Positions 1,805-64,000 of a stretch of DNA of 64,000 nucleotides are shown one piece after another. The notes under the pieces were generated by a model that was not told the DNA's origin, made no database searches, and saw nothing but the letters and a program-made list of their open reading frames with translations. Positions within the stretch are counted from its first letter, which is position 1. Each line of letters begins with the position of its first letter. The position numbers and the translations under genes are program-made. The DNA lies in contig OZ296649.1 in assembly GCA_965655095.1 (NCBI GenBank), positions 120,342,001 to 120,406,000 of the forward strand. The letters run 5' to 3'. The stretch is from Haplodiscus bocki (lineage: Eukaryota).

Positions 1805-1904
1805 ATGTTAAGACGTTTTTAATTATTTAATTCGTATTGATATTTCAATCTTGGGTATTTTGGGACATTGGGTATTTTGGCCTTGGGTATTTTGGGGTGA
1901 AACC
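1805..1904. mobile_element. Additional right end of the TTGGGTATTTTGG foldback family
   Basis: TTTCAATCTTGGGTATTTTGGGACATTGGGTATTTTGG...GGGGTGAAACC resembles 1315-1441. Confidence 0.55.
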
Positions 1905-8792: not shown

Positions 8793-8798
8793 AATAAA
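8793..8798 (+). promoter_or_regulatory. Candidate MED21 polyadenylation signal AATAAA
   Basis: AATAAA ~390 nt after the stop; an alternative ATTAAA lies near 8585. Weak evidence in AT-rich DNA. Confidence 0.3.
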
Positions 8799-9829: not shown

Positions 9830-10782
9830 GACTCTAATACTGTCTATCTTGAGAGATAAAGCAACACTGCTTGCTCGTCGCTCGCTGCACGTAATTAAGC
9901 GGTGTTTTGTGTTTCTCTTGTGTGCTGTGTTATTCATCGCACTGTGTATGGCGCCTTCGAAACGCATTACTGATAACGAACGTCACGCAAAATTTTATTA
10001 TACTCCAAAGGGAGAAGAAATGAAGAGAAATGCCCTTGTGCGGCTGTTATTTCCTAGAAAACTGGAAAGGGTTATTTGATTTTAATGGCTCATATCAAAG
10101 TATTCTATAACAACTATGAACGAGAAGCAAAAAACAATCAAGGTACTCTTAGGAATATTGAGATTTTGCCTGTTGTTATGAACATTTAGGGGTGGATTGA
10201 CTGGATTTGTTGCGGATTAAAGCCATTTTACACTGTGGAAAATAACCTGGATCGCTGATATTCAAAATTAAATCCTATCTCTTATAAAGCGTTCATGAAG
10301 TTTTGGGAATTATTTACCTAATTCGTGTGGCAAACGAAAGTCGTGAGACAAACAAGTTTGCATTGGTATTGGATGGATGGGGGAAATGCAGATATTTTTG
10401 AAACTCATGATGAAGGAAACTTTGCAGAAGGAACTTTGGCATAAAAGTCGAACAAAGAAGAATCTGGATTTATGAACTGCAATTTCCTTTTATCCACCTC
10501 AAACATTGTTGAGCGTTTCTTCAGTTTGTTGGGAAATGCGTTAGTTGAGCATCACCAATCTTTTTGAATTCGGAGCATTTGGAGGAGCAGCTCCTCCTAA
10601 AAGTCAACAAGCGGTTCTGGAGCCCACAAACTGTCGATTCTGCTTATAATCAATAACTCGATTAAATTTTCCATTAATGGCCCTTAGTGGATGACGGATT
10701 TTCATTTTTCAAAATTGCCATTAAAGTATTTTTCATCTTTTCAAAATAAAAACTAACTTCCATTAACTTTTCCGTAGCCCTG
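9830..10782 (+). mobile_element. 5'-truncated first hAT copy at the array edge
   Basis: Homology starts abruptly at GACTCTAATACTGTCTATC (~9830), so the left TIR and ~190 bp are missing. Relic CDS 9948-10656; right TIR ends at 10782. Confidence 0.85.
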
Positions 10783-11463
10783 ACTAGTAGTAACAAGTTT
10801 CTTGAACCCCCTTGCGTGGAAGCAAATTCCTATGGATTGGTTAATTTTCACTCGTTCGTGGCTTAACCCATCATCGTCCGTACGAGGTACGTGATATATT
10901 TCTCCAATGCTCAAAAACATGACGTTGGGTTGTTCGACAATTCAAGACCGACATCCGACGCCTCAGCACTTGCCGGGCCTGATATTTTCAGGCGCCTGAC
11001 TAGGTAGGTGCCCCCCTTTCTCAAACAGGAAGAATCAATCGATTTTCTTGCTGTTGTCAATCCTTCCATTTCATTAACTGCACTTACATAAATGTTTCAA
11101 GGAGATTGCGTTGAAGCGCTAATGGGAAGACTCAACAGAGCCATAACCTTTACGAACAATGCAAATATTCAGTTACTGTCGGACAAGCGGCTGGACGGAA
11201 ATTAATGGGCAAGTTTCTGACATCAAATTGGGGTAGTACCACTTGCAGAACTGATGGTATTATGTGGAAAGTTAATGTTAAAAAATTATTTGGTGTACAA
11301 TATCTCACCGTATCGTTAGTTATGTGCACTCTATCTTTCCAAGCTAAGTTGGCTGCGTTTTTCTACAAAAATTTATCTGTCACAAAATTGAAGGTTTGGA
11401 TATGGATATTTTAAGCTAAAAACACTCCACCCCCCCCCCCCCGCCCCAAACCACCACCACCAA

Positions 11464-12619
11464 CAGGGCTATGGAAAAATTGGAGCATTCCAATAACTGC
11501 CAATAATGGAAGCCGTTATTTGATGGAATCATTTTTGAAATTGCCATTAATCGATGGAAACGCAGCCCCACTTTTAAACATTATCTCCCGGGCCGATGTA
11601 CTGTACAGATTGAAGTGGCGTTTGACAAATAATACGTTCTTATCTAGTATTTACAAATGAAGAGTGACCTTAATACTGTCTATCTTGAGAGATGATGCAG
11701 CACTGCCTGCTCGTCGCTTGTTGCAATTACTTAAGCGGTGTTTTGTGTTTCTCTTGTGTGCTGTGTTTTTCATCGCACTATGTATGGCGCCTTCGAAACG
11801 CATTACTGATAACGAACGTTACGCATAAATATATTTCACTCCAAGGGGAGAAGGAATGAAGAGAAATATCGTTGTGCGGATGTTTTTTCCTAGAAAACTG
11901 GGAAGGTTTATTCAATTTTAATGTCTCATATCAAAGTATTCTATGAGAAATATGAACGAGAAGCAAAAAACAATCAAGGCACTCTTAGGAATATTGAGAG
12001 TTCGCCTGTTGTTATGAACGTTTAAGGGTGGATTGACTGGAATTGTTGCGGACTAAAGCCATTTTACACTGTGGAAAACGACCTGGATCGCTGATATTCA
12101 GGATTAAATCCTATCTCTTATAAAGCGTTCATGAAGTTTTGGGAATTATTTACCTAATTCGTGTGGCAAACGAAAGTCGTGAGACAAACAAGTTTGCATT
12201 GGTATTAGATGGATGGGGGAAATGCAGATATTTTTGAAACTCATGATGAAGGAAACTTTGCAGAAGGAACTTTGGCATAAAAGTCGAACAAAGAAGAATC
12301 TGGATTTATGAACTGCAATTTCCTTTTATCCACCTCAAACATTGTTGAGCGTTTCTTCGGTTTGTTGGGAAATGCGTTAATTGAGCATCACCAATCTTTT
12401 TGAATTCGGAGCATTTGGAGGAGCAGCTCCTCCTAAAAGTCAACAAGCGGTTCTGGAGGCCACAAACTGTCGATTCTGCTTATAATCAATAACTCGATTA
12501 AATTTTCCATTAATGGCCCTTAGTGGATGAATGGATTTTCATTTTTCAAAATTGCCATTAAAGTACTTTTCATCTTTTCAAAATAAAAACTAACTTCCAT
12601 TAGCTTTTCCGTAGCCCTG
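11464..12619 (+). mobile_element. Non-autonomous hAT DNA transposon, ~1.16 kb (first complete copy in the array)
   Basis: Left end CAGGGCTATGGAAAAATT and right end TTTTCCGTAGCCCTG are inverted repeats with a hAT-type CAGGG terminus. CCATTAATGG-like subterminal repeats occur at both ends, and transposase remnants lie inside. Confidence 0.9.
11784..12492 (+). pseudogene. Internally deleted, frameshifted hAT transposase relic (present in every unit)
   Basis: Stitched across frames and copies: MAPSKRITDNERYAKFYFTP..KCRCAAV..KTGKGYSILMSHIK (BED-like), IYGWIDWICCGLKPFYTVENDLDRRYSKLNPISYKTFMKYLELVT (hAT DNA-binding/dimerisation helices), KFALVLDGW (first catalytic Asp, 12190-12216), then directly NFAEEILA..YMNCKFLLPTSNLVERFFS..EHLEEQLLLKVNKRFWSPQTVDSAYNQ* (C-terminal hATC domain with the catalytic Glu). 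Confidence 0.88.
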
Positions 12620-27600: not shown

Positions 27601-30600
27601 AATCAATCGATTTTCCTGCTGTTGTCAATCATTCAATTTCATTAACTCCACTTACATGAATGCTTCAAAGAGATTGCGTTGAAGCGCTAATGGGAGGACT
27701 CAACAGAGCCATAACATTTACGAAAAATGCAAGTATTCAGTTTCGTTCGGACAAACGGCTGGTTGGAATTTAATGGGCAAGTTTCTGACATTATATTGGG
27801 ATGGTACCACTTACAGAACTGATGGTATTGTGTGGAAAGATATAGTAAAAAACTTAATTGGTGTATGATATTTCACCGTATTGTTGGTTGTGTGCACTCT
27901 ATCATTCAAAGCTAAGTTGGCTGCGTTTTTCTAGAAAAACTTATCTGTCACAAAATTGAGTATTTGGATATGGATATTTTAAACTAAAAACACCCCACCC
28001 CCCCCCCCTCCTCCCCCCGCCCCAAACCAACACCACCAACAGGGCTATGGAAAAATTAACGGAGCATTCCAATTATTGCCATTAATGGAAGCCGTTATTT
28101 GATGGAATCATTTTTGAAATTGCCATTAATGGATGGAAACGCGGCCCCACTATTAGCCATTAGTTCCAGGGCCGATGTACTGTACAAATTGAAGTGGCCT
28201 TTGACAAATAATACGTCCCTATCTAATATTTACAAATGAAGAGTGTCTCTAATACCGTCTATCTTGAGAGATAATGCAGCACTGCCTGCTAGACGCTTGT
28301 TGCAATTTTTTAAGCGGTGCTTTGTGTTACTCTTGAGTGCTGTGTTATTCATGGCACTATGTATAGAGCCTTCGAAACGCATTACTGATAACGAACGTTA
28401 CGCAAAATTATATTTCACTCCAACGGGAGAAGAAATGAAGAGAAATGTCGTTGTGCGGCTGTTGATTCCTAAAAACACTTGAAAAGTTTATTCAATTTTA
28501 ATGCCTCATATCAAAGTATTCTATGAGATCTATGAACGAGAAGCAAAAAACAAACAAGGCACTCTTAGGAATAATCAGATTTTCCCTGCTGTTTTGACCT
28601 TTTAGGGTTGGATTGACTGGATTTGTTGCTGATTAAAGCCATTTTACACTGTGGAAAATGACCTGGATTGCTGATATTCAAAAGTAAATCCTATCTCATA
28701 TAAAACTTTCATGAAGTTTTGGGAGTTTTTTACCTAATTCGTGTGGCAATCGAAAATCGTGAGACAAACAAATTTGCATTGGTATTAGATGGATGAGGGA
28801 AATAAAGATATTTCTGAAACTCATGATGAAGGAAACTTTGCAGAAGAAAGTTTGGCTTAAAAGTCGAACAAAGAAGATTCTGGATATATGAACTGCAAGT
28901 TCCTTTTACCTACCTCAAACCTTGTTGAGCGTTTCTTCAGTTTGTTGGGAAATGCATTAACTGAGAATCACCAATCTTTTTGACTTCGGAGCATTTGGAG
29001 GAGCAGCTCCTCCTAAAAGTCAGCAAGCGGTTCTGGAGCCCACAAACTGTCGATTCTGCTTATAATCAATAACTCGATTTAATTTTCCATTAATGGCCCT
29101 TAGTGGATGAAAAGATTTTCAATTTTCAATATTGCCAATAATGGATTTTTCATAATTTCAAAATAGAAATTAGTTTCCAATAATGTTTCCGTAGCCCTGA
29201 CCACCAGTAGTAACAAGATTTTTGAAACTTTTTGCGTTAAAGCAAATTCCTTTGGATTGGTTAATTTTCACTCGTTCGTGGCGTAAGCCATCATCGTCCG
29301 TACGAGGTACGTGATATATTTCTCCAATGCTCGAAAACATGACGTTGGGTTGTTCGACAATTCAAGACCGAAATCTGACGCCTCAGCACTTGCCGGGCCT
29401 AATGTTTTCAGGCGCCTGACTAGGTAGGAGCCCCCTTCTCAAACGGGAAAAATCAATCGATTTTCCTGCTGTTGTCAATCATTCAATTTCATTAACTCCA
29501 CTTACATGAATGCTTCAAAGAGATTGCGTTGAAGCGCTAATGGGAGGACTCAACAGAGCCATAACATTTACGAAAAATGCAAGTATTCAGTTTCGTTCGG
29601 ACAAACGGCTGGTTGGAATTTAATGGGCAAGTTTCTGACATTATATTGGGATGGTACCACTTACAGAACTGATGGTATTGTGTGGAAAGATATAGTAAAA
29701 AACTTAATTGGTGTATGATATTTCACCGTATTGTTGGTTGTGTGCACTCTATCATTCAAAGCTAAGTTGGCTGCGTTTTTCTAGAAAAACTTATCTGTCA
29801 CAAAATTGAGTATTTGGATATGGATATTTTAAACTAAAAACACCCCACCCCCCTCCCCCCGCCCCAAACCAACACCACCAACAGGGCTATGGAAAAATTA
29901 ACGGAGCATTCCAATTATTGCCATTAATGGAAGCCGTTATTTGATGGAATCATTTTTGAAATTGCCATTAATGGATGGAAACGCGGCCCCACTATTAGCC
30001 ATTAGTTCCAGGGCCGATGTACTGTACAAATTGAAGTGGCCTTTGACAAATAATACGTCCTTATCTAATATTTACAAATGAAGAGTGTCTCTAATACCGT
30101 CTATCTTGAGAGATAATGCAGCACTGCCTGCTAGACGCTTGTTGCAATTTTTTAAGCGGTGCTTTGTGTTACTCTTGAGTGCTGTGTTATTCATGGCACT
30201 ATGTATAGAGCCTTCGAAACGCATTACTGATAACGAACGTTACGCAAAATTATATTTCACTCCAACGGGAGAAGAAATGAAGAGAAATGTCGTTGTGCGG
30301 CTGTTGATTCCTAAAAACACTTGAAAAGTTTATTCAATTTTAATGCCTCATATCAAAGTATTCTATGAGATCTATGAACGAGAAGCAAAAAACAAACAAG
30401 GCACTCTTAGGAATAATCAGATTTTCCCTGCTGTTTTGACCTTTTAGGGTTGGATTGACTGGATTTGTTGCTGATTAAAGCCATTTTACACTGTGGAAAA
30501 TGACCTGGATTGCTGATATTCAAAAGTAAATCCTATCTCATATAAAACTTTCATGAAGTTTTGGGAGTTTTTTACCTAATTCGTGTGGCAATCGAAAATC

Positions 30601-42600: not shown

Positions 42601-45600
42601 TCATTCAAAGCTAAGTTGGCTGCGTTTTTCAACGAAAACTTATTTGTCACAAAATTTAGGATTTGGATATGGATATTTTAAGCCAACCTCCCCCCCCCCG
42701 CCCCAAACCACCACCACCAACTGGGCTATGGAAACATTAATGGAGCATTGCAATAATTGCCATTATTGGAAGCCGTTATTTGATGGAATCAGTTTTGAAA
42801 TTGCCAATTAATGGATGGAAACGCAGCCCCACTATTAGCCATTATTTCCAGGGCCGATGTACTGTACAGATTGAAGTAGCGTTTGACAAATAATACGTTC
42901 CTATCTAGTATTTACAAATGAAGAGTGACTCTAATACTGTCCATCTTGAGAGGTAATGCAGCACTGCCTGCTCCTCGCCTGTTGCAAATTTTTACGCTGT
43001 GTTTTGTGTTTATCTTGTGTGCTGTGTTATTCATCGCACTATGTATGACGCCATCGAAACGCATTACTGATATCGAACGTTACGCAAAATTATATTTCAC
43101 TCCACCGTGAGGAGAAATGAAGAGAAATGTCTTTGTGCGGCTGTTGTTTACTAGAAAAGTGGAAAAGTTTACTCAATTTTATTGTCTCATCAAAATCTTC
43201 TTTAAGGACTATGAACGAGAAGCGAAAAACAATCACGGCACGCTTAGGAAAATTGAGACTTCGCCTGTTTTTTCTAAACAATTTTGCGTGGATTGACTGG
43301 ATTTGTTTCGGATTAAACGCTTTTTTTACTGTGGAAAATGATCCGGATCGCCGATATTCAAAAAAAAAACATATTTCTTATAAAACGTTCATGAAGTATT
43401 TGGAACTAGTTACCCCTAATTTGTGTGGTAAACGAAAGTCGTGAGACAAACAAACTTGCGTTGGTATTAGTTGGATGGGGGAAATGCAGATATTTTTGAA
43501 GCTCATGATGAAGGAAACTTTGCAGAAGAAATTTTGGCATAAGAAACGAACAAAGAAGAATCTGGATATATGAACTGCAATTTCCTTTACCCACCTCAAA
43601 CCTTGTTGAGCGTTTTTTCACTTTGTTGGCAATTGCGTGAACTCAGCATCATCAATCTTTTCGGCTTCGAAGCTTTTGAAGGACCAGCCCTTCCTAAAAG
43701 TCAACAAGTGGTTCTGGAGCCCAATTTGTCGAATCTGCTTATAATCAATAACTCGATTAAACTTTCCTTTAGGGCCTCCTAATGGATTAATGGATTTCCT
43801 ACTTTCAATATTGCCATTAATGGATTTTCCCTCTTTTCAAAATGAAAATACGTTTCCAATAATTTTTCCTTCTGCCCTGACCACCAGTAGTAGCAATATG
43901 TTGGAACCTTCTTGCGTAGCCATCATCGTCCCTACGAAGTACGTGATATATTTCTCCAATGTTCGAAAAGATGACGTTAGGTTGCTCGACAAAACGAGAC
44001 CAACATCTGACACTTCAGCACTTGCCGGGCCTAATGTTTTCAGGCGCCTGACTAGCTAGGAGCCCCCCGTTCTCAAATGCCAAAAATCAAACGGTTTTTT
44101 TGCTGTTTTCAAACATTCCATTTCATTAACTCCACTTACATGAATGTTTCAACGGGATTGCGTTGAAGCGCTAATGAGAGGACTCAACAGAGCCATAACA
44201 TTTACGAAAAATGCAAATATTCAGTTTCGTTCGGACAAACGGCTGGACGGAAGTTAATAGGCAAGTTTCTGACATCACATTGGGATAGTACCACTTACAG
44301 AACTGATGGTATTGTGTGGAAAGATATAGTAAAAAAAATTGATTTGTGTATGATATCTCAGGGTATCGTTTGTTATGTGCACTCTATCATTCAAGGATAG
44401 GTTGGCTCCGTTTTTCTACAAAAACTTTTCTGTCACAATTTCGAAGATTTGGATATGGACATTTTAAGCCAAATACACACCGTCCCACTCAAACCTCCAG
44501 CAACAACAGGGCTATGGAAAAATTAATGGAGCATTCAAAAAACTGCCATTAATGGAAGCCGTTATTTGATGGAATCATTTTTGAAATTGTCCTTAGTGGA
44601 TGGAAATGCAGCCCCATTACCAGCCATTATTTCCAGGGCCGATGAACTGTACAATTTGAAGTGGCGTTCGACACAAAATACGTTCTTAACTAGTATTTAC
44701 AAATGGAGAGTGACTCTAATAATGTCTATCTTCAGAGAAAAAGCAGTACTGCCTGCTCGTCGCTTGCTGCACCTAACTAAGCGGTGTTTTGTGTTTTTCT
44801 TGTGTGCTGTGTTATTCATCGCACTATGTATGACGCCATCGAAACGCATTACTGATATCGAACGTTACGCAAAGTTATATTTCACTCCAACGTGAGGAGA
44901 AATGAAGAGAAATGTCTTTGTGCGGCTGTTGTTTACTAGAAAAGTGGAAAAGTTTACTCAATTTTATTGTCTCATCAAAATTTTCTTTAAGGACTATGAA
45001 CGAGAAGCGAAAAACAATCACGGCACCCTTAGGAATATTGAGATTTCGCCTGTTTTTTTTTAAACAATTTTGGGTGGATTGACTGGATTTGTTTCGGATT
45101 AAACGCTTTTTATACTGTGGAAATTGATCCGGATCGCCGATATTCAAAAATAAAACATATTTCTTATAAAACGTTCATGAAGTATTTGGAATTAGTTACC
45201 CCTAATTTGTGTGGCAAACGAAAGTCGTGAGACAAACAAATTTGCATTGGTATTAGTTGGATGGGGGAAACGCAGATATTTTTGAGGCTCATGATGAAGG
45301 AAACTTTGCAGAAGACATTTTGGCATAAGAAACGAACAAAGAAGAATCTGGATATATGAACTGCAATTTCCTTTACCCACCTCAAACCTTGTTGAGCGTT
45401 TTTTCTTTTTGTTGGCAATTGCGTGAACTCAGCATCATCAATCTTTTCGGCTTCGAAGCTTTTGAAGGACCAGCCCTTCATAAAAGTCAACAAGTGGTTC
45501 TGGAGCCCAATTTGTCGAATCTGCTTATAATCAGTAACTCGATTAAACTTTCCTTTAGGGCTTCTTAATGGATTAATGGATTTCCTACTTTCAATTTTGC

Positions 45601-48600
45601 CATTAATGGATTTTCCCTCTTTTCAAAGTGAAAATACGTTTCCAATAAATTTTCTTTCTGCCCTGACCACCAGTAGTAGCAATATGTTGGAACCTTCTTG
45701 CGTAGCCATCATCGTCCATACGAAGTACGTGATATATTTCTCCAATGTTCGAAAAGATGACGTTAGGTTGCTCGACAAAACGAGACCAACATCTGACACT
45801 TCAGCACTTGCCGGGCCTAATGTTTTCAGGCGCCTGACTAGCTAGGAGCCCCCCGTTCTCAAATGCCAAAAATCAAACGGTTTTTTTGCTGTTTTCAAAC
45901 ATTCCATTTCATTAACTCCACTTACATGAATGTTTCAACGGGATTGCGTTGAAGCCCTAATGAGAGGACTCAACAGAGCCATAACATTTACGAAAAATGC
46001 AAATATTCAGTTTCGTTCGGACAAACGGCTGGACGGAAGTTAATAGGCAAGTATCTGACATCAGATTGGGATAGTACCACTTACAGAACTGATGGTATTG
46101 TGTGGAAAGATATAGTAAAAAAATTGATTTGTGTATGATATCTCAGGGTATCGTTTGTTATGTGCACTCTATCATTCAAGGATAGGTTGGCTCCGTTTTT
46201 CTACAAAAACTATTCTGTCACAATTTCGAAGATTTGGATATGGACATTTTAAGCCAAATACACACCCTCCCACTCAAACCTCCAGCAACAACAGGGCTAT
46301 GAAAAAATTAATGGAGCATTCAAAAAACTGCCATTAATGGAAGCCGTTATTTGATGGAATCATTTTTGAAGTTGTCCTTAGTGGATGGAAATGCAGCCCC
46401 ATTACCAGCCATTATTTCCAGGGCCGATGAACTGTACAATTTGAAGTGGCGTTCGACACAAAATACGTTCTTAACTAGTATTTACAAATGGAGAGTGACT
46501 CTAATAATGTCTATCTTCAGAGAAAAAGCAGTACTGCCTGCTCGTCGCTTGCTGCACCTAACTAAGCGGTGTTTTGTGTTTTTCTTGTGTGCTGTGTTAT
46601 TCATCGCACTATGTATGACGCCATCGAAACGCATTACTGATATCGAACGTTACGCAAAATTATATTTCACTCCAACGTGAGGAGAAATGAAGAGAAATGT
46701 CTTTGTGCGGCTGTTGTTTACTAGAAAAGTGGAAAAGTTTACTCAATTTTATTGTCTCATCAAAATTTTCTTTAAGGACTATGAACGAGAAGCGAAAAAC
46801 AATCACGGCACCCTTAGGAATATTGAGATTCCGTCTGTTTTTTTTAAACAATTTTGGGTGGATTGACTGGATTTTTTCGGATTAAACGCTTTTTACACTG
46901 TGGAAAATGATCCGGATCGCCGATATTCAAAAATAAAACATATTTCTTATAAAACGTTCATGAAGTATTTGGAATTAGTTACCCCTAATTCGTGTGGCAA
47001 ACGAAAGTCGTGAGACAAACAAATTTGCATTGGTATTAGTTGGATGGGGGAAATGCAGATATTTTTGAAGCTCATGATGAAGGAAACTTTGCAGAAGACA
47101 TTTTGGCATAAGAAACGAACAAAGAAGAATCTGGATATATGAACTGCAATTTCCTTTGCCCACCTCAAACCTTGTTGAGCGTTTTTTCACTTTGTTGGCA
47201 ATTGCGTGAACTCAGCATCATCAATCTTTTCGGCTTCGAAGCTTTTGAAGGACCAGCCCTTCATAAAAGTCAACAAGTGGTTCTGGAGCCCAATTTGTCG
47301 AATCTGCTTATAATCAATAACTCGATTAAACTTTCCTTTAGGGCTTCTTAATGGATTAATGGATTTCCTACTTTCAATATTGCCATTAATGGATTTTCCC
47401 TCTTTTCAAAGTGAAAATACGTTTCCAATAAATTTTCTTTCTGCCCTGACCACTAGTAGTAGCAATATGTTGGAACCTTCTTGCGTAGCCATCATCGTCC
47501 ATACGAAGTACGTGATATATTTCTCCAATGTTCGAAAAGATGACGTTAGGTTGCTCGACAAAACGAGACCAACATCTGACACTTCAGCACTTGCCGGGCC
47601 TAATGTTTTCAGGCGCCTGACTAGCTAGGAGCCCCCCGTTCTCAAATGCCAAAAATCAAACGGTTTTTTTGCTGTTTTCAAACATTCCATTTCATTAACT
47701 CCACTTACATGAATGTTTCAACGGGATTGCGTTGAAGCGCTAATGAGAGGACTCAACAGAGCTATAGCCTTCCCGAAAAAGGCAAGTCTTCAATTTCGTT
47801 CGGACAAGCGGCTGGACGGAATTTGATGGGCATTTTTCTGACATCAAATTGGGATGGTACCACTAACAGAACCGATGGTATTATGTGGAAAGCTAGTTAT
47901 AGTAAAAAAATTAATTGTGTATGATATCTCAGCGTATCGTTAGTTTTGTGCACTCTATCATTCAAAACTGAGTTGGCTGAGTTTTTCTACAAAAATTTAT
48001 ATGTCACACAATTGAAAACTCGGATATGGACATTTTAAGCCGAATACAACCCCCCCCCCCCCCCAAAACCACCACCAGAAGCAGGGCTAGGGAAAAAATA
48101 ATGAAGCGTTCCATTAATTACCATTAACGAAAGCCGTTAACTGATGGAATCAATTTTGAAAATGCCTTTAAAGAATGGAAACGCAACCCCAATAAAAGCC
48201 ATTACTTCCAGGGCCGATGAACTCTACAATTTGAAGCAACATTCGACAAATAATTCGTTCTTAACTATTTTTCACAAATGGAGAGTGACTCTAAAAAGGT
48301 CTATCTTCAGAGAAAAAGCAGTACTGCCTGCTCGTCGCTTGCTGCACCTAACTAAGCGGTGTTTTGTGTTTCTCTTGTGTGCTGTGTTATTCATCGCACT
48401 GTGTATGTGCCTTCGAAGTGCCTGACTGATACCGAACGTTACGCAAAATTTTATTTTACTCCGACGGGTGAAGAAATGAAGAGAAATGTCGTTGTGGTGC
48501 TCTTATTTCGAAAAAAAGCTGCAAAGGCTTTCCTGTTTTTGATGGCTCATGTCAAAGTAATCTATAAGTACTATGAAGAAGAAGCAAAAAGCAATCAAGG

Positions 48601-49909
48601 CACTCTTAGGAATATTGAGACGTCGCTTGTTGTTAAGAACATTTATGGATGGATTGATTTAATTTGTTGCGGAATAAAGCCATTTTACACCGTGGAAAAA
48701 GACCTGGACTGCTGATATTCAAAATTAAATCCTATCTTTTATAAAACGTTCATGAAGCCATTGCAATTAGGTACCCCTGGTTCGCGTGGCAAACGAAAAT
48801 TATGAGACAAACAAAAATGCATTGGTATAAAAAAATGGGAGAAATGCAGATTTTTTTGAAACTCATGTTGAAGGAAAATATGAAAAAGGAGTTTTGGCAT
48901 AAAAGTCGAACAAAAAAGAATCTGGACATATGAACTGCAAATTCCCTTTACCAACCTCAATCCTTGTTGAGCGTTTCTTCAATTTGTTGGGAATTGCGTT
49001 AGCTCAGCATCGCCAATATTTATGACTTCGGAGCATTTGAAGGAGCAGCTCTTTCTAAAAGTCAACAGGTGGTTCTCGAGCCCACAAACTGTCGAATTTG
49101 CTTATATTCAATAACTCGAGTAAATTTTCCATTTTTGACCCCAACGGATTAAGGAATTTTCAATTTTCAATATTGCCATTAAGGTTTTTTCCTATTTTCA
49201 AATTGAAAATTCATTTCCATTTTTTTTCCGTAGCCCTGACCACAAGTAGTAACAAGATTTTTGAACCCTATTGCGTGGAAGGATTTTTTTTGGGATTGGT
49301 TAATTTTCACTCTTACGTGGCTTAAACCAACATCGTCCGTACAAGATACGTGAAATAATTCTCGAAAGCTCAAAAGCAAGACGTTGGGTTGCTCCACAAA
49401 ACAAGACCAACATCTGACACTTCAGCACTTGCCGGGCCTTATGTTTTCAGGCGTTTGACTAGGAACGAGCCCCATTCTCAAATGCAAAAAAGCAATCGAT
49501 TTTTTGCTGCTGTCAAGCATTCCATTTCATTGACTCCACTTACATAATTGTTTTAATGGGATTGCGCTGAAGCGCTAATGGGGGGACTCAACAGAGCTAT
49601 AGCCTTCCCGAAAAAGGCAAGTCTTCAATTTCGTTCGGACAGACGGCTGGACGGAAGTTAATAGGCAAGTTTCTGACATCAGATTGGGATAGTACCACTT
49701 ACAGAACTGATGGTATTGTGTGGAAAGATATAGTAAAAAAATTGATTTGTGTATGATATCTCAGGGTATCGTTTGTTATGTGCACTCTATCATTCAAGGA
49801 TAGGTTGGCTCCGTTTTTCTACAAAAACTTTTCTGTCACAATTTCGAAGATTTGGATATGGAAATTTTAAGCCAAATACACCCCCTCCGACTCAAACCTC
49901 CAGCAACAA

Positions 49910-50680
49910 CAGGGCTATGAAAAAATTAATGGAGCATTCAAAAAACTGCCATTAATGGAAGCCGTTATTTGATGGAATCATTTTTGAAATTGTCCTTAGT
50001 GGATGGAAACGCAGCCCCTTTATTAGCCATTAATTCCAGGGCCGAATGACTGTACAGATTGAAGTGGCGTAAGACAAATAATATGTTCCTAACTAGTATT
50101 TACAGATGGAGAGTGACTCTAGTAATGTCTATCTTCAGAGAAAAGCAGTACTGCCTACTTGTTGCTTGCTGCATCTAATTAAGCGGTGCTTTGTGTTTAT
50201 CTTGTGTGCTGTGTTATTCATTGCACTGTGTATGGCGCCTTCGGATTGCTTTACTGATAACGAACATTACGCAAAAATTTTTTTAATCCACCGGGAGAAG
50301 AAAGGAAGAAAAATGTCGTTGTGGGGCTGTTATTTCCAAAAAATTTTGAAAGGGTTTATTTGATTGTGATGTCTCATGTCAAAGTAATCTATAAGTACTA
50401 TAAACCAGAAGAAAAAGGCAGTCAAAACACTATTGGGAATATTGAGATTCCGCCTGTTGCCATAAACATTTATGGGCGGATTGACTGAGTTGGTTTCGGA
50501 TTAAAGCCTTTTTACACTAAGGAAAAAGACCTGGATCGCTGATATTCAAAATTAAATCCTACCACTTGTAAAACGTTCATGAAGTATTTGGAATTAGTCA
50601 CACCTATTTCGCCTGGCAAACGAAAGTCGTGAGACAAACAAATTTTCATTGGTATTAGACAAATGGGTGAAACGCAGATT
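49910..50680 (+). mobile_element. hAT copy 23 lacking the C-terminal half and right TIR
   Basis: Junction GCAGAT|TACGTG at ~50680 joins the DGW region directly to spacer sequence. The unit is 1336 bp rather than ~1840 bp. Confidence 0.85.
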
Positions 50681-53600
50681 ACGTGTTATATTTCACGAAA
50701 GCTCAAAAACATGACGTTGGGTTGCTCGACAAAACGAGACCAACATCTGACGCTTCAGCACTTGCCGGGCCTATAGTTTTCAGGCGCCTGACTAGGTAGG
50801 AGCCCCCATTATCAAATGCGAAAAATTAATCGATTTTTTTGCTGTTGTTAAACATTCCATTTCATTAACTCCACTTACAAATTTTTCAAAGGGATTGCGT
50901 TGAAGCACTAATGGGAGGATTCAACAAAGCTTTAGGTTTCACGAAAAATGCAAGTGTTCAGTTTCGTTCAGACATGTGGCCGGACAGAATTTAGTGGGCA
51001 AGTTCCTGACATCAAATTGGGATAGTACCACTTACAGACCTGAGGGTACCATGTGAAAAGATACTTATAGTAAAAAAAAACAATTGGTGTTTGATATCTC
51101 AGCGTATTGTTAGTTTTGTGCACTCTATCATTCAAAGCTAAGTTGGCTGCGCTTTTCAACAAATACTTTTCTGTTACAAAATTGAAGAATTGGATATGGA
51201 TATTTTAAGCCAAATACAACCCCCCCCCCAAACCACCAGCAGCAGCAGGACTACGGAAAAATTAAGGAAGCGTTCCATTAATTGCTATTAATTAAAGCCG
51301 TTAAATGATGGAATCTTTTTTGAAAATGCCCCTAATGGATGGAAATGCAGCCCCATTACCAGCCATTATTTCCAGGGCCGATGAACTGTACAATTTGAGG
51401 TGGCGTTCGACACAAAATACGTTCTTAACTAGTATTTACAAATGGAGAGTGACTCTTATAATGTCTATCTTCAGAGAAAAAGTAGTACTGCCTGCTCGCC
51501 GCTTGCTGCACCTAACTAAGCGGTGTTTTGTGTTTCTCTTGTGTGCTGTGTTATTCATCGCACTGTGTATGGCGCCCTCGAATTGCATTACTGATAACGA
51601 ACGTTACGCAAAAGTATATTTCAATCCAACGGGAGAAGAAATGAAGAGAAATGTCGTTGTGCAGCTGTTGATTCCTAAAAACAGTTGAAAAGTTTATTCA
51701 ATTTTAATGCCTCATATCAAAGTATTCTATGAGAACTATGAACGAGAAGCAAAAAACAATCAAGGCACTCTTAGGAATATTGAGGGTTCGCCTGTTGCTA
51801 TGAACATTTAGGGGTAGATTGACTGGATTTGTTGCGGACTAAAGCCATTTTACACTGTGGAAAATGACCTGAACTGCTGATATTCAGAATTAAATCCTAT
51901 ATTTTATAAAACTTTCATGATGTTTTGGGAATTTTTTACCTAATTCGCGTGGCAAGCGAAAATCATGAGACAAACAAAATTGCATTGGTATAAAAAGGAT
52001 GGGAGAAATTCAGATATTTTTGCAGCTCATGTTGAAGGAAAATATGAAGAGGGAGTTTTGGCATAAAATTCGAACAAAAAAGAATCTGGACATATGAACT
52101 GCAAAATTCTTTACCCACCTCAATCCTTGTTGAGCGTTTCTTCAGTTTGTTGGGAATTGTGTTAACTCAGCATCGGCAATCATTTTGACTTCGGAGCATT
52201 TGAAAGAGAGGCTCTGCCTAAAAATCATTAAGTGGTTTTGGAGCCCACAAGCTGACGAATTTGCTTATATTCAATAACTCGATTAGATATTCCATTTTTG
52301 GCCCTAATGGAATAAGTGATTTTCAATATTCAATATTGCCGTTATGGTTTTTTTCTTATTTTAAAATTGAAAATTCATTTCCATCACTAATTCCGTAGCC
52401 CTGACCACGAGTATTAACAAAATTTTTGAGCCCTATTGCGTGGGAGCAAATTTTTTTGCATTGGTTATTTTTCAGTCGCTCGTGGCTTAAGCCATCATCG
52501 TACGTACAAGGTACGTGAAATAATTCTCGAAAGCTCAAAGAAATGACGTTGGGTTGCTCCACAAAACGAGACCAACATCTGACAGTTCAGCACTTGCCGG
52601 GCCTAATGTTTTCAGGCGTTTGACTAGGAACGAGCCCCCCATTCTCAAATGCAAAAAAAACAATCGATTTTTTGCTGTTGTCAAGCATTCCATTTCATTA
52701 ACTCCACTTACATAAATGTTTTAAATGGATTGCCTTGAAGCGCTAATGGGAGGACTCAACAGAGCTTAGGCCTTCCCGAAAAAACCAAGTGTTCAATTTC
52801 ATTCGGACAAGCGGCTGGACGGAATTCGATGGGCAGGTTTCTGACATCAAATTGGGATGGTACCACTTACAGAACCGATGGTATTATGTGGAAAGATATT
52901 TATAGTAAAAAAACTAATTGTGTATGATATCTCAGCGTATCGTTAGTTTTGTGCACTCTATCATTCAAAACTGATGTGGCTGCGTTTTTCTACAAAAATT
53001 TATCTGTCACAAAATTGAAGACTCGGATATGGACATTTTAAGCCGAATACATCCCCCCCCAGACCACCACCAGTAGCAGGGCTATGGAAACAATAATGAA
53101 GCGTTCCATTAATTACCATTATTGAAAGCCGTTAATTGATGGAATCAATTTTGAAAACGCCTTCAAAGGATGGAAACCCCATTAAAAGCCATTATTTCCA
53201 GGGTTGATGAACTCTACAATTTGAAGTGGCCTTCGACAAATAACACGTTCTTAACTAGTATTTACAAATGGAGAGTGACTCTAATAAGGTCTATCTTCAG
53301 AGAAAAAGCAGTACTGCCTGCTCGTCGCTTGCTGCACTTAACTAAGCGGTGTTTTGTGTTTCTCTTGTGTGCTGTGTTATTCATCGCACTGTGTATGGCG
53401 CCTTTGAAATGCCTGACTGATAACGAATGTTACGCAAAGTTTTATTTTACTCCGACGCGAGAAGAAATGAAGAGAAATGTCGTTGTGGTGCTCTTATTTC
53501 GAAAAAAAGCTGCAAAGGCTTTCCTGTTTTTGATGGCTCATGTCAAAGTAATCTATAAGTACTATGAAGAAGAAGCAAAAAGCAATCAAGGCACTCTTAG

Positions 53601-59600: not shown

Positions 59601-60277
59601 CCATCAAAGTTTTTTCATATTTTGAATTTGAAAATTGATTTCCATTAATTTTCCGCAGCACTGACTACCAGTAGTAACAAGTCTTTTGAACTCTATTGCG
59701 TGGAATCATTTTTTTTGGATTTGTTAATTTTCACTCGCTCGTGGCTTAAGCCACCATCGTCCGTACAAAGTACGTGAAATATTTCTCGAAAGCTCAAAAT
59801 AATGACGTTGGATTGCTCCACAAAACGAAACCAACATCTGACACTTCAGCACTTGCCAGGCCTAATGCTTTCAGGCGCCTGACTAGGTAGGAGCCTCCCA
59901 TTCTCAAATGCCAAAAATTGATATACTTTTTTGCTGTTGCTGAGCATTTCATTTCATTAACTCCACTTACATAAATGTTTCAAAGGGATTGCGTTGAGGC
60001 GGTAATGAGAGGACCCAACAGAGCAGTAGTTTTCACGAAAAATGCAAGTTTTCAGTTTCGTTCGGTCACGCGGCTGCTTGGAATTTATTGTGCAAGTGTC
60101 TGACTTCAAATTGGGACAGCACCACTTACAGAACTGAAGGTATTATGTGGAAAGATAATTATAGCAAAAAAAAATGTTGGCTGCGTTTTTCTACAAAACT
60201 TTATCTGTCACAAAATTGAAGATTTGAATATGGATTTTTTAAGCTAAATACCCCCCTCTCCAAAGTACCACCAACAG

Positions 60278-63200
60278 CTGGGCTGTGGAAAAATTAATGA
60301 AGCATTCCATTAATTCCTATTAACGGAAGCCGTTAATTGATGGAATCATTTTTGAAATTGCCCTTAATGGATGGAAACGCAGCCCCATTACAAGCCATTT
60401 TTGCCATTTTTTCCAGGGCCGATGTACTGTACAGATTGAAGTGGCGTTTGATCAACATTACGTCCTTAACTAGTTTTTACAAATGGAGAGTGACTCTAAT
60501 ACTGTCTATTATGAGAGACAAAGCATCACTGGTTGCTCGTCGCTTGTTGCACGTAATTAAGCGGTGTTTTGTGTTTCTCTTGTGTGCTGTGTTATTCATC
60601 GCACTGTGCATGGTGCCTTTGAAACGCATTACTGATAACGAGCGTTACGCAACTTTTTATTTTACTCCAGCGGGAGAAGAAATGAAGAGGAATTTCGTTG
60701 TGGTGCTGTTATTTCCAAGAGAACTGGAAAGTGTTATTTGATTTTGATAGCTCATATCAAAGTAATCTATAGGGACTATGAACGAAAAGCAAAATGCAAT
60801 CAAGGCACCCATACGCTTATTGAGATTTCGCCTGTTGTTATGAACATTAGTGGGTGGATTGACATGATTGATTGCGGATTAAAGCCATTTTACACTGTGG
60901 AAAATGACCTGGATCGCTGATATTCAAAATTAAATCCTATCTCATAAAACGTTCATGAAGTATTTGGAATTAGTTACCCCTATTTCTAGTGGCAAATGAA
61001 AATCATGAGACAAACAAAAATGCATTGGTATAAAAAGGATGGGAGAAATTCAGATATTTTTGCAGCTCATGTTGAAGGAAAATATGAAGAGGGAGTTTTG
61101 GCATAAAATTCGAACAAAAAAGAATCTGGACATATGAACTGCAAAATTCTTTACCCACCTCAATCCTTGTTGAGCGTTTCTTCAATTTGTTGGGAATTGC
61201 GTTAGCTCAGCATCGCCAATCTTTTTGACTTCGGAGCATTTGAAAGAGCGGCTCTGTGAGATATACAAGTTTACACTGGTTTTAGACGGATGGAGGAGAG
61301 GCAGAATTTTTTGAAACTCATGATGAAGAAGATTTTGAAGACTGAATTTTGGCATAAAAGTCGAACAAAAGAGAATCTGAATATATGAACTGCAAATTCC
61401 TTTGACCCACGTCAATCCTCGTTGAGCGTTTCGTCAGTTTATTGGGAATTGCGTTAACTTAGCATCGCCAATCTCTTTGACTTCGGAGCATCTGCAGGAG
61501 CAGCTCTTCCTAAAAGTCAACAAGTGATTCTGGAGCCCACAAACTGTCGATTTTGCTTATATTCAAAGCTCGATTAAATTTTCCAATTTTGGCTCTTTTG
61601 GGTTAACGGTTTTCAATATTCAACATTGCCATCAAAGTTTTTTCTTATTTTGAATTTGAAAATTCATTTCCATTAATTTTCCGCAGCACTGACTACCAGT
61701 AGTAACAAGTCTTTTGAACTCTATTGCGTGGAATCATTTTTTTTGGATTTGTTAATTTTCACTCGCTCGTGGCTTAAGCCACCATCGTCCGTACAAAGTA
61801 CGTGAAATATTTCTCGAAAGCTCAAAATAATGACGTTGGATTGCTCCACAAAACGAAACCAACATCTGACACTTCAGCACTTGACAGGCCTAATGCTTTC
61901 AGGCGCCTGACTAGGTAGGAGCCTCCCATTCTCAAATGCCAAAAATTGATATACTTTTTTGCTGTTGCTGAGCATTTCATTTCATTAACTCCACTTACAT
62001 AAATGTTTCAAAGGGATTGCGTTGAGGCGGTAATGAGAGGACCCAACAGAGCAGTAGTTTTCACGAAAAATGCAAGTTTTCAGTTTCGTTCGGTCACGCG
62101 GCTGCTTGGAATTTATTGTGCAAGTGTCTGACTTCAAATTGGGACAGCACCACTTACAGAACTGAAGGTATTATGTGGAAAGATAATTATAGCAAAAAAA
62201 AATGTTGGCTGCGTTTTTCTACAAAACTTTATCTGTCACAAAATTGAAGATTTGAATATGGATTTTTTAAGCTAAATACCCCCCTCTCCAAAGTACCACC
62301 AACAGCTGGGCTGTGGAAAAATTAATGAAGCATTCCATTAATTCCTATTAACGGAAGCCGTTAATTGATGGAATCATTTTTGAAATTGCCCTTAATGGAT
62401 GGAAACGCAGCCCCATTACAAGCCATTTTTGCCATTTTTTCCAGGGCCGATGTACTGTACAGATTGAAGTGGCGTTTGATCAACATTACGTCCTTAACTA
62501 ATTTTTACAAATGGAGAGTGACTCTAATACTGTCTATTATGAGAGACAAAGCATCACTGGTTGCTCGTCGCTTGTTGCACGTAATTAAGCGGTGTTTTGT
62601 GTTTCTCTTGTGTGCTGTGTTATTCATCGCACTGTGCATGGTGCCTTTGAAACGCATTACTGATAACGAGCGTTACGCAACTTTTTATTTTACTCCAGCG
62701 GGAGAAGAAATGAAGAGGAATTTCGTTGTGGTGCTGTTATTTCCAAGAGAACTGGAAAGTGTTATTTGATTTTGATAGCTCATATCAAAGTAATCTATAG
62801 GGACTATGAACGAAAAGCAAAATGCAATCAAGGCACCCATACGCTTATTGAGATTTCGCCTGTTGTTATGAACATTAGTGGGTGGATTGACATGATTGAT
62901 TGCGGATTAAAGCCATTTTACACTGTGGAAAATGACCTGGATCGCTGATATTCAAAATTAAATCCTATCTCATAAAACGTTCATGAAGTATTTGGAATTA
63001 GTTACCCCTATTTCTAGTGGCAAATGAAAATCATGAGACAAACAAAAATGCATTGGTATAAAAAGGATGGGAGAAATTCAGATATTTTTGCAGCTCATGT
63101 TGAAGGAAAATATGAAGAGGGAGTTTTGGCATAAAATTCGAACAAAAAAGAATCTGGACATATGAACTGCAAAATTCTTTACCCACCTCAATCCTTGTTG

Positions 63201-63719
63201 AGCGTTTCTTCAATTTGTTGGGAATTGCGTTAGCTCAGCATCGCCAATCTTTTTGACTTCGGAGCATTTGAAAGAGCGGCTCTGTGAGATATACAAGTTT
63301 ACACTGGTTTTAGACGGATGGAGGAGAGGCAGAATTTTTTGAAACTCATGATGAAGAAGATTTTGAAGACTGAATTTTGGCATAAAAGTCGAACGAAAGA
63401 GAATCTGAATATATGAACTGCAAATTCCTTTGACCCACGTCAATCCTCGTTGAGCGTTTCGTCAGTTTATTGGGAATTGCGTTAACTTAGCATCGCCAAT
63501 CTCTTTGACTTCGGAGCATCTGCAGGAGCAGCTCTTCCTAAAAGTCAACAAGTGATTCTGGAGCCCACAAACTGTCGATTTTGCTTATATTCAAAGCTCG
63601 ATTAAATTTTCCAATTTTGGCTCTTTTGGGTTAACGGTTTTCAATATTCAATATTGCCATTAAGGTTTTTTCTTATTTTGAAATTGATAATTCATTTCCG
63701 TTAATTTTCCGTAGCCCTG
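60278..63719 (+). mobile_element. Two expanded hAT copies (1414 bp each, period 2028 bp) with an internal ~255-bp duplication
   Basis: The DGW-to-PTSN..ER segment occurs twice per element. Junction GGCTCT|GTGAGATATACAAG at ~61256 and ~63284. Confidence 0.85.
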
Positions 63720-64000
63720 ACTACCAGTAGTAACAAGTCTTTTGAACCCTATTGCGTGGAATCAATTTTTTTTGGATTGGTTAATTTTCACTCGCTCGTG
63801 GCTTAAACCATCATCGTCCGTACAAGGTACGTGAAATTTTTTTCGAAAGCTCAAAACACTGACGTTGGGTTGCTCCACAAAACGAAACCAACATCTGACA
63901 CTTCAGCACTTGCCGGGCCTAATGTTTTCAGGCGTTTGACTAGGTAGAAGCCCCCATTCTCAAATGCGAAAAATTGATGTACTTTTTTGTTGTTGTTAAG

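What the first reader, a model, noticed from the sequence alone, without database searches (positions are those of the whole stretch)
9830..64000. >54-kb macrosatellite whose monomer is a TIR-bounded hAT transposon frozen inside its original target site
Seen: 30 head-to-tail units, each left TIR - deleted transposase - right TIR - ~680 bp common spacer, with the same flanks in every copy. Known: cut-and-paste transposition gives each copy new flanks and a new 8-bp TSD. Inference: one insertion locus was amplified by unequal crossover or rolling-circle copying, producing ~58 regularly spaced transposon ends. Possible roles, all untested: a reservoir of elements mobilisable in trans, a decoy that titrates transposase, a piRNA/siRNA source against the autonomous parent, or a centromeric/heterochromatin organiser bound by a domesticated BED-finger protein.
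Basis: partly seen in the sequence, partly recalled or inferred. Interest (0 to 1): 0.88.

Follow-up and report, generated by a model that had tools for sequence, protein, structure and literature searches.

The report
Tandem array of one hAT insertion
One old insertion of a crippled hAT "cut-and-paste" transposon, with about 680 bases of its neighbouring DNA, was copied head-to-tail about 32 times into a 58-kb repeat that now looks like decaying, functionless DNA; it is a clear example of a known way that transposons seed satellite DNA.

Summary
From window 9832 a 1.84-kb unit repeats head-to-tail. The same contig, fetched beyond the window, shows the array ending at about 67,486 (about 31.6 units, 57.7 kb) with non-array DNA on both sides.

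Each unit holds a 1.16-kb element and a 0.68-kb anonymous spacer.
- **Element:** it has 24-bp TIRs (CAGGGCTAYGGAAAAATTAATGGA), CCATTAATGG subterminal motifs and a broken transposase remnant.
- **Flanks:** near-identical 8-mers (ACCACCAA / ACCACCAG) abut both ends.
- **hAT membership:** relatives of the remnant carry a BED finger, and their profile matches Hermes transposase (E 3e-15).
- **Solo copies:** six other loci in the same assembly carry this element TIR-to-TIR with unrelated flanks and no spacer. One has a perfect 8-bp TSD, and two are 1.9-kb long forms that keep the part deleted in the array.

All array copies form one clade (100/100). Element and spacer have diverged equally (13.5% each, r 0.79). 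Neighbouring units are the most alike, and a second contig of the same locus differs by exactly one unit.

The core reading therefore holds: one insertion locus was amplified stepwise by unequal exchange. A single rolling-circle burst and a Helitron-like origin are disfavoured. No sign of function was found, and small-RNA, chromatin and decoy roles remain untested. It is a new member of a known kind.

The parts
9832..64000 (+). Tandem array of 1.84-kb units (m00-m29) within the window. It continues to about 67,486 on the same contig (L015 1-15119 = window 52368-67486).
9832..11463 (+). First unit (m00), truncated inside the element at unit position about 208. It abuts DNA that has no match to the unit and lies at single-copy depth.
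29882..31721 (+). Reference unit m11: element plus spacer.
29882..31041 (+). Internally deleted, non-autonomous hAT element (1160 bp) of the reference unit.
29882..29905 (+). Left terminal inverted repeat (unit-consensus CAGGGCTATGGAAAAATTAATGGA).
31018..31041 (+). Right terminal inverted repeat. In the unit consensus it is complementary to the left one at 23 of 24 positions.
29874..29881 (+). Left copy of the 8-bp target-site duplication (ACCACCAA). It lies in an (ACC)n-like tract whose length varies between units.
31042..31049 (+). Right copy of the 8-bp target-site duplication (ACCACCAG).
29921..29974 (+). Left subterminal CCATTAATGG motifs (at 29921 and 29965).
30929..30986 (+). Right subterminal CCATTAATGG motifs (at 30929 and 30977).
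30448..30635 (+). N-terminal transposase remnant, up to the first catalytic-Asp motif (FALVLDGW). It aligns to P0014 residues 84-147 in this copy and 27-152 on the unit consensus, with frameshifts and stops.
30652..30893 (+). C-terminal hAT dimerisation-domain remnant (P0014 residues 418-497), broken by a stop and frameshift shared by nearly all units. The deletion of residues about 153-417 lies between this part and the previous one.
31042..31721 (+). Spacer of 680 bp: anonymous non-coding DNA co-amplified with the element. No Pfam, Rfam or tRNA match.
31262..31267 (+). CTAG|GT hexamer in the spacer, exact in 22 of the 30 units in the window. It is the only trace that could link the unit to the Helitron-like GT...CTAG stackers reported elsewhere in this genome.
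42721..48081 (+). Block of three closely related 1786-bp variant units (m18-m20). The second contig (L002) has only two.
49910..51245 (+). Unit m22, with a deletion of unit positions 770-1267 that removes the right TIR. The same deletion is present in L002.
60278..64000 (+). Units m28-m29, a 2028-bp variant with an internal 251-bp duplication (unit positions 719-969). The two units are 98% alike.

Best explanation
A non-autonomous hAT element inserted once into anonymous DNA and made an 8-bp target-site duplication (shown). By then it had already lost about 265 codons of its transposase and carried a shared stop and frameshift. A 1.84-kb segment holding the whole element, both TSD copies and about 0.67 kb of flank was later duplicated in tandem. 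The array then grew stepwise by unequal exchange or replication slippage between neighbouring units to about 32 copies (inferred from tree shape, the distance-identity gradient and a one-unit difference between two contigs). The simplest layout puts the first duplication junction at unit position 1254|1255, where the array ends on the right, with a later deletion trimming the left edge into the first element (inferred). Since then element and spacer have decayed together at the same, apparently neutral, rate. The array is a transposon-seeded macrosatellite with no detectable function. It lies within about 1.4 kb of a MED21-like gene.
For: - **Array and unit anatomy:**
- **hAT identity:** the remnant profile finds 71 proteins at E <= 0.001. 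P0014 carries a BED finger above Pfam's cut-off. The element aligns to P0014 residues 27-152 and 418-497, and every one of the 29 copies matches it on its own (E 1e-14 to 4e-5). The family profile hits Hermes transposase structures at 3e-15 to 5e-14. CCATTAATGG occurs five times, only near the ends, against 0.05 expected.
- **The element alone is the mobile unit:** L001, L009, L010, L011/L012, L013 and L014 carry it ending exactly at the TIRs, with unrelated flanks and no spacer. L009 has a perfect 8-bp TSD. L010 and L013 are 1.93-1.97-kb long forms covering P0014 residues 20-497.
- **Single origin:** 30 array elements form one clade at 100/100 against 6 solo copies, and all share the same deletion junction.
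- **Co-amplification and neutral decay:** mean pairwise distance is 0.135 for the element and 0.135 for the spacer, r = 0.79, Mantel 0 of 2000. The TIRs are no better kept than the rest. CpG sites are not hypermutable.
- **Stepwise growth:** identity falls from 0.918 at lag 1 to 0.855 at lag 11, clades are nested and made of neighbours, and L002 has two instead of three units in the m18-20 block.
- **Edges:**
Against: - The array is not a whole number of units (it starts at unit position 208 and ends at 1254), so the in-situ model needs one extra deletion at the left edge.
- The TSD lies in an (ACC)n-like tract whose length varies between units. It reads 7/8 in most units, and its exact ancestral form cannot be fixed.
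- A conserved CTAG|GT sits in the spacer, in a genome where earlier notes report Helitron-like elements that stack at that hexamer.
- One solo copy (L013) shares 23 of 26 nt of right flank with the spacer, and this is unexplained.
- Absence of function is argued from sequence decay only. No RNA, small-RNA or chromatin data could be examined.
- L002, L015 and probably the four short-read runs come from one assembly or study, so support from independent individuals is limited.
Confidence: 0.78

Rival explanations
1. Rolling-circle or extrachromosomal-circle origin. A 1.84-kb circle holding the element plus flank was copied into a concatemer that integrated between the present left and right flanks. 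Later local duplications added structure.
For: Both array edges fall at arbitrary positions of the unit (208 and 1254) and abut DNA unrelated to the unit. A concatemer gives this without any extra event. Earlier notes report many other kb-scale arrays of unrelated content in this genome, and another one lies in L001. A review attributes the Bari1 cluster to an anomalous rolling-circle event (PMC9659126).
Against: A single burst predicts a star-like tree with all units equally apart. The tree instead has deep splits (15-20%) and shallow ones (2-5%), with neighbours clustering. No circle junction or donor locus was found. The only partial look-alike flank (L013) matches for 26 nt only.
Confidence: 0.1
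2. The 1.84-kb unit is a non-autonomous Helitron-like element (GT...CTAG) with a nested hAT. It stacked head-to-tail by the junction-targeting or read-through mechanism that earlier notes report for this genome.
For: CTAG|GT is exact in 22 of the 30 units in the window, preceded by a small hairpin or palindrome (CAGGCGCCTG), and lies in one of the better-kept spacer stretches. Earlier notes s1-361968, s1-354036 and s1-361961 describe such stackers in the same genome.
Against: Neither array edge lies at CTAG|GT. The left edge is 660 bp and the right edge 130 bp away from it. A CTAGGT hexamer on the + strand is expected by chance about 0.45 times per unit. The hairpin is not significant (z = -1.3) and shows an uncompensated change. 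No unrelated element sits in any of the CTAG|GT sites of the array. None of the six other loci with the element carries the spacer. No Rep or helicase remnant was found.
Confidence: 0.05
3. Two insertions of the same deleted element about 0.67 kb apart, in the same orientation, served as direct repeats. Unequal exchange between them amplified element plus spacer. This is the double-insertion route of McGurk and Barbash, with a longer gap.
For: hobo, a hAT, formed a 13-19-copy tandem from a double insertion in one fly line (PMC5932611). This model needs no novel non-homologous junction inside the spacer.
Against: The 8-mers on the two sides of each element are near-identical (7/8). A single insertion predicts this; two independent insertions do not, unless targeting is very specific. 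The solo copies show varied target sites. The array would be expected to end in an element on both sides, but the right edge is in the spacer.
Confidence: 0.05
4. Assembly artefact: a shorter repeat was inflated, or unrelated copies were chained, by the assembler.
For: The array lies about 7.7 kb from a contig end. All sequence evidence comes from one assembly and one read study.
Against: Units differ by 2-20%, with unit-specific deletions and duplications. A second contig reproduces the same order of variants, including the truncated m22. Short-read unitigs of four runs hold thousands of variant pieces. Their summed depth is about 14 times single copy at each position of two units, which is compatible with the assembled number (a rough figure, since the tool warns it is not a copy number).
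Confidence: 0.02

Closest known systems
hobo tandem array in Drosophila melanogaster line I03 (McGurk and Barbash 2018, PMC5932611)
   Same: A hAT-superfamily element repeated head-to-tail with the same junction sequence in every copy. It was inferred to descend from one event at one locus and to have expanded by unequal exchange, and it lies outside pericentric heterochromatin.
   Different: There the units are separated only by the 8-nt TSD motif (double insertion), number 13-19, are very young and are private to one line. Here 0.68 kb of non-transposon flank is part of the unit, both TSD copies are kept, there are about 32 units, and divergence reaches 20%.
Bari1 cluster in region h39 of D. 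melanogaster (Marsano et al. 2003, as cited in PMC9659126 and PMC5932611)
   Same: About 80 tandem copies of a whole cut-and-paste transposon at one locus, fixed and old. A rolling-circle origin has been proposed.
   Different: It is Tc1-mariner, not hAT. It is heterochromatic and all copies have incomplete TIRs. Here both TIRs, the subterminal motifs and the TSD survive in most units, and the context is next to a housekeeping-type gene.
MITE- and foldback-derived satellites (Xstir, miDNA4, Tetris; PMC9659126, PMC4079207) and tandem hAT-MITE accumulations at Atlantic cod inversion breakpoints (PMC12368964)
   Same: Satellite or tandem DNA whose monomer derives from a class II element, including hAT-derived MITEs.
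   Different: In those cases the repeated unit is usually a part of the element (TIR or internal repeats), and the arrays often travel inside the element. Here the unit is a whole element frozen in its insertion site together with host flank.
Composite macrosatellites such as D4Z4 or the potato Sobo repeat (from my own knowledge, not checked here)
   Same: Kilobase-sized units that combine transposon- or retrogene-derived sequence with other genomic DNA, amplified at one or a few loci.
   Different: Different element classes. D4Z4 has a documented chromatin and disease role, and none is shown here.

Membership tests
hAT superfamily DNA transposon | Short terminal inverted repeats | tested here: met
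   24-bp TIR, 23/24 complementary in the unit consensus and beginning CAG. The same ends occur in six solo loci.
hAT superfamily DNA transposon | 8-bp target-site duplication | tested here: met
   L009 GGCAGTAC/GGCAGTAC 8/8; L011 6/8; L010 and L014 5/8; array ACCACCAA/ACCACCAG 7/8. L013 has none.
hAT superfamily DNA transposon | Transposase homologous to known hAT transposases (RNase-H-like core plus C-terminal hAT dimerisation region, often a BED finger) | tested here: met
   The profile of full-length relatives hits Hermes structures 4d1q, 2bw3, 6dww and 8edg at 3e-15 to 5e-14. P0014 has zf-BED at 21.4 bits against a cut-off of 20.6. PF05699 is weak (E 0.0017-0.011) in 5 of 7 relatives. Long copies L013 and L010 align to P0014 at 4e-70 and 7e-53. 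The Atlas feature search gave PF05699 for 56 of 60 hits. Pfam does not see the remnant of a single array copy.
hAT superfamily DNA transposon | Target-site consensus nTnnnnAn | tested here: inconclusive
   The few TSDs seen (GGCAGTAC, ACCACCAG) have A at position 7 but not T at position 2. There are too few sites to judge.
Non-autonomous internal-deletion derivative | Same ends as a longer coding form, with an internal part missing | tested here: met
   The array element equals long-form positions 1-762 plus the last 399 bp. About 800 bp (P0014 residues about 153-417) is present in L010 and L013 and absent here. L009, L011 and L014 carry other deletions.
Transposon-derived satellite / macrosatellite | Many head-to-tail copies at one locus descending from one founder | tested here: met
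   About 31.6 units and 57.7 kb. Array copies are monophyletic at 100/100.
Transposon-derived satellite / macrosatellite | Turnover by unequal exchange (copy-number variation, local homogenisation) | tested here: met
   One-unit difference between two contigs of the locus. Identity declines with distance. Multi-unit duplications are present, for example m21 and m24 at an offset of 4995 bp.
Transposon-derived satellite / macrosatellite | Chromatin, centromere or small-RNA role | not testable with these tools
   No RNA run holds the stretch and no chromatin data are available. CpG decay gives no hint of germline methylation.
Helitron-like GT...CTAG self-stacking arrays (earlier notes on this genome) | Units begin with GT and end with CTAG, and array edges coincide with these termini | tested here: not met
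   The hexamer is present once per unit, but the array edges are at unit positions 208 and 1254, not at about 1383.
Helitron-like GT...CTAG self-stacking arrays (earlier notes on this genome) | The unit occurs elsewhere as single copies or next to unrelated family members | tested here: not met
   Six other loci carry the hAT without the spacer, and no foreign element sits in any CTAG|GT site of the array. This is a limited sample: the spacer itself could not be searched genome-wide (one search was blank).
Double-insertion TE tandem (hobo I03 type) | TIR-to-TIR junction separated only by the TSD or a few bases | tested here: not met
   615-691 bp of non-element DNA lies between consecutive elements.

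The most novel reading that the evidence does not exclude
This array may be one output of a genome-wide process that turns arbitrary kilobase segments into tandem arrays in this (probably coral) genome. Earlier notes list arrays of snoRNA genes, 7SL genes, recombinase and ATPase fragments and Helitron-like cassettes. The process would be rolling-circle copying tied to the Helitron-like CTAG|GT machinery, and the conserved CTAG|GT in the spacer would be its footprint. A further possibility is that the roughly 60 intact-looking hAT ends make the array a small-RNA source or transposase sink for the family.
Probability: 0.1. Interest if true: 0.7.

Novelty: new member of a known kind. Interest (0 to 1): 0.36.

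Why it matters
This is an unusually legible fossil of the step from transposon to satellite. The founder insertion is preserved about 30 times over with both TIRs, the subterminal motifs and both TSD copies. The dispersed siblings and the long coding form are available for comparison, and both array edges are in hand. The age order (insertion, then internal decay, then amplification) and the growth mode (stepwise, local) can therefore be read from sequence alone.

It also adds a hAT-plus-flank case to a short list of whole-DNA-transposon arrays (hobo, Bari1, P-related). It adds one more kb-scale array to a genome that earlier notes describe as rich in them. On present evidence it does not reveal a new mechanism or a function.

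Tried and rejected
1. TRF cannot see the period, because its cap is 500 bp. I used k-mer offsets and BLAST instead.
2. Pfam on single-copy remnants and on spacer ORFs gave nothing. P0014 alone against PDB sequences gave nothing. Only profiles worked.
3. Rfam at gathering and at E <= 0.1, and ARAGORN, found no RNA gene in the units. This is not an RNA-gene array like the U14 and 7SL ones noted elsewhere in this genome.
4. A spacer ORF searched against 5.8 billion proteins found no candidate. A genome-wide hunt for solo spacers by this route therefore failed and says nothing.
5. Only assembled unitigs were available for the reads. They give no starts, strands, RNA or true copy number. The listed loose ends were swamped by an unrelated high-copy repeat at 8782-9372, so flanks of dispersed copies could not be read from them.
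6. The hairpin upstream of CTAG|GT is not better than shuffles (z = -1.3).
7. I looked for similarity between the array's left and right flanks, and between the flanks and the unit. Only a shared high-copy repeat appeared.
8. CpG hypermutability, as a proxy for germline methylation, is absent.
9. I considered and rejected extra conservation of the TIRs (0.92 and 0.85 against an element mean of 0.90).
Full report
**1. Is the array there?**

Yes. The spectrum of distances between repeated 16-mers peaks at 1842 bp. BLAST of one unit against the window gives an unbroken, same-strand series from 9832 to the window's end. I phased the units on the left transposon end and obtained one truncated first unit (m00) and 29 further units. 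Most are 1823-1851 bp. The variants are 1767-1790 bp (m18-20, m26, m27), 1336 bp (m22) and 2028 bp (m28; m29 is the same variant, cut by the window end).

Pairwise identity between units is 80-98%. It falls with distance, from 0.918 for neighbours to 0.855 at eleven units apart. Units this different, with unit-specific deletions and duplications, are not what assembly collapse or inflation produces.

**2. Where the array ends.**

A protein look-up showed that the window belongs to a 357-kb contig of ENA assembly ERZ26859043 (L015 = window 52368-72778). On it the array runs two more units and stops at about window 67,486, at unit position about 1254, which is 95 bp into the spacer. The left edge (9832) is at unit position about 208, inside the element.

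Both flanks lack any similarity to the unit. They share only an unrelated high-copy repeat. The left flank is at single-copy depth in short-read unitigs, and a MED21-like gene lies about 1.4 kb upstream. The whole array is thus about 57.7 kb, or about 31.6 units.

**3. Anatomy of the unit.**

- **Ends.** Left ends (CAGGGCTATGGAAAAA...) were found 29 times and recognisable right ends (...TTTCCGTAGCCCTG) 26 times. Left-to-right distance is 1151-1170 bp in regular units (1413 bp in the two 2028-bp variants). The following gap is 667-691 bp in most units and about 615 bp in m26-m29.
- **TIRs.** In the unit consensus the inverted repeats are 24 bp with one mismatch. I used the consensus only inside scripts, for coordinates and alignment.
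- **Subterminal motifs.** The palindrome CCATTAATGG occurs five times, all within about 120 bp of an end, against 0.05 expected.
- **Flanks.** The outer flanks are the same in every unit...ACCACCAA|CAGGG and CCCTG|ACCACCAGTAGT. The 8-mers abutting the ends match 7/8 in most units. The tract is (ACC)n-like and varies by slippage: some units read ACCAGTAG on one side or the other, and short-read unitigs show an ACC insertion at 12619. A target-site duplication is therefore clearly present, but its exact ancestral spelling cannot be fixed.
- **Spacer.** It has no Pfam, Rfam or tRNA match.

**4. Is the element a hAT?**

Pfam does not recognise the short remnant of one copy. A language-model search gave the hAT dimerisation family for 56 of 60 hits.

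A HMMER profile built from 14 of the window's own remnants found 71 proteins at E <= 0.001 among 1.8 billion. The top two are ORFs of this same element. Among the others, P0014 (507 aa) has a BED zinc finger above Pfam's cut-off, the motif FALILDGWTS, and a C-terminus like the remnant.

On the unit consensus, nt 404-765 align to P0014 residues 27-152 and nt 770-1029 to residues 418-497. Each of the 29 copies matches P0014 on its own (E 1e-14 to 4e-5).

A profile of seven full-length relatives hits the Hermes transposase structures at 3e-15 to 5e-14, and five of the seven show weak PF05699 matches. Membership in the hAT superfamily is thus met on TIRs, TSD length and transposase homology.

**5. 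Dispersed siblings.**

A search with the element's 5' ORF found called ORFs on five further contigs of the same assembly. I fetched these loci, and together with L001 they give six independent loci (L012 duplicates L011).

| Locus | Element length | Notes |
|---|---|---|
| L009 | 975 bp | perfect TSD GGCAGTAC |
| L011 = L012 | 926 bp | TSD 6/8 |
| L014 | 1390 bp | TSD 5/8 |
| L010 | 1967 bp | long form, TSD 5/8 |
| L013 | 1934 bp | long form, no TSD |
| L001 | 5'-truncated | right end exactly at the TIR |

In every locus the element ends exactly at the TIRs, the flanks are unrelated, and no spacer follows.

L010 and L013 keep the roughly 800 bp missing from the array element and align to P0014 over residues 20-497 (E 7e-53 and 4e-70). 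Both are pseudogenes. The other solo copies carry different internal deletions.

This is the behaviour expected of a real cut-and-paste family, and it contrasts sharply with the invariant flanks inside the array.

**6. One origin, amplified together.**

In a maximum-likelihood tree of 30 array elements and 6 solo copies, the array elements form one clade with 100/100 support. They also share one deletion junction and one stop/frameshift pattern.

Pairwise distances computed separately for element and spacer have the same mean (0.135 and 0.135) and are strongly correlated (r = 0.79; 0 of 2000 permutations as high). The TIRs are no better conserved than the rest. CpG sites are not hypermutable and CpG o/e is 0.87. 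Element and spacer have therefore shared one history and decay at one, apparently unconstrained, rate.

**7. How it grew.**

The tree is nested rather than star-like. There is a deep split between m01-m20 and m21-m31 (15-20% apart), and shallow pairs or triplets of neighbours (m10/11, m13/14, m18-20, m28/29). Multi-unit duplications are visible: m21, m24 and m25 are 95-96% alike, with an offset of 4995 bp between m21 and m24.

A second contig of the assembly (L002, 42 kb, about half the coverage in its name) is colinear with window 31.6-53.7 kb at 96.7-97.4% identity. It shares the truncated m22, but has two instead of three units in the m18-20 block. A whole-unit difference inside the most homogeneous block is the signature of unequal exchange or slippage.

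Only one such difference in 20 kb, at 3% sequence divergence, also says that turnover is slow. The array is largely frozen, unlike actively homogenised centromeric satellites.

**8. First step and rivals.**

- **In-situ duplication (favoured).** The right edge at unit position 1254 fits a first tandem duplication whose junction is 1254|1255. The left edge inside the first element then needs one later deletion.
- **Concatemer from a circle.** This would explain both arbitrary edges at once, but not the nested tree unless later local duplications are added. I keep it at about 0.1.
- **Helitron-like origin.** Earlier notes on this genome report Helitron-like GT...CTAG elements that stack at CTAG|GT, and the spacer holds a conserved CTAG|GT (exact in 22 of the 30 units in the window). 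However, the array edges are not at that site and the hexamer is expected by chance about 0.45 times per unit. The nearby hairpin is not significant and changes without compensation. No foreign element occupies any of these sites, and the spacer is absent from all other loci with the element. I put it at about 0.05.
- **Double insertion.** This is the route shown for hobo (PMC5932611). It fits poorly, because both sides of each element carry the same 8-mer and the right edge is in the spacer.

**9. Function.**

Nothing in the sequence suggests one. No RNA run held the stretch, so the small-RNA idea is untested rather than refuted. The 'reservoir' and 'decoy' ideas need a live transposase, and the two long copies retrieved are broken. 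No closer full-length protein appeared in the profile search, where the next hit after the element's own ORFs scores 52 bits. I therefore commit to a neutral, decaying transposon-seeded macrosatellite.

**10. Limits.**

The reads were assembled unitigs only. Their summed depth is about 14 times single copy at each position of two units, with the element at about twice the spacer. This is compatible with the assembled copy number plus a few solo copies, but the tool warns that it is not a copy number. L002, L015 and the solo loci all come from the window's own assembly.

One observation stays unexplained. L013, a long solo copy without a TSD, carries a 26-nt stretch 9 nt beyond its right TIR that is 23/26 identical to the start of the spacer.

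**11. Verdict.**

The kind is known: whole-DNA-transposon arrays such as hobo I03 and Bari1, and TE-derived satellites in general. What sets this case apart is that a complete insertion site, with host flank, is the repeated unit, and that the whole history can be read from sequence. Interest is moderate to low.

Noticed in passing
window 8782-9372: Very high-copy repeat: summed unitig depth is about 1000 times the single-copy level in all four runs, with many alternative joints. A diverged piece lies in the array's right flank (L015 about 15786-15884, opposite strand).
   Followed up: partly
window 7327-8404: Exon-like ORFs of a MED21-like gene (Pfam Med21, E 7e-9, just under the cut-off) about 1.4 kb upstream of the array. 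The array therefore sits next to a housekeeping-type gene, not in obvious heterochromatin.
   Followed up: partly
L001 14,800-20,357: Another kilobase-scale tandem array (period about 1547 bp) on the contig that carries a solo copy of the element. It holds CTAGGT twice per unit on the minus strand, so it may be one of the Helitron-like cassette trains reported by earlier notes.
   Followed up: no
L013 7711-7745: A long solo copy of the hAT lacks a TSD and is flanked by an inverted (TG)n/(CA)n pair. It carries 23/26 nt identical to the start of the array's spacer just beyond its right TIR. Unexplained: shared target repeat, flank transduction or conversion are all possible.
   Followed up: partly
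L003-L008 (contigs of six unrelated metagenome samples): An identical 507-aa BED-finger hAT transposase (P0014) is carried on seven 2-3-kb contigs from independent metagenomes, six of which were fetched. This suggests a recently active relative in some widespread environmental eukaryote.
   Followed up: no
L002 10001-10315 and other called genes of ENA ERZ26859043: The assembly's gene calls read TGA as Trp (code 4) on these eukaryotic contigs. Many of its database 'proteins', such as P0001, are therefore read-throughs of decayed transposon sequence.
   Followed up: yes
window 150-1900: Cluster of 15-17-bp minisatellites (for example TTGGGTATTTTGGGC) and inverted copies of about 100 bp.
   Followed up: no
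window 60278-64000 and 49910-51245: Structural variants inside the array: a 251-bp internal duplication (unit positions 719-969) in m28 and m29, and a 498-bp deletion in m22 that removes the right TIR. The deletion is shared with the second contig.
   Followed up: yes
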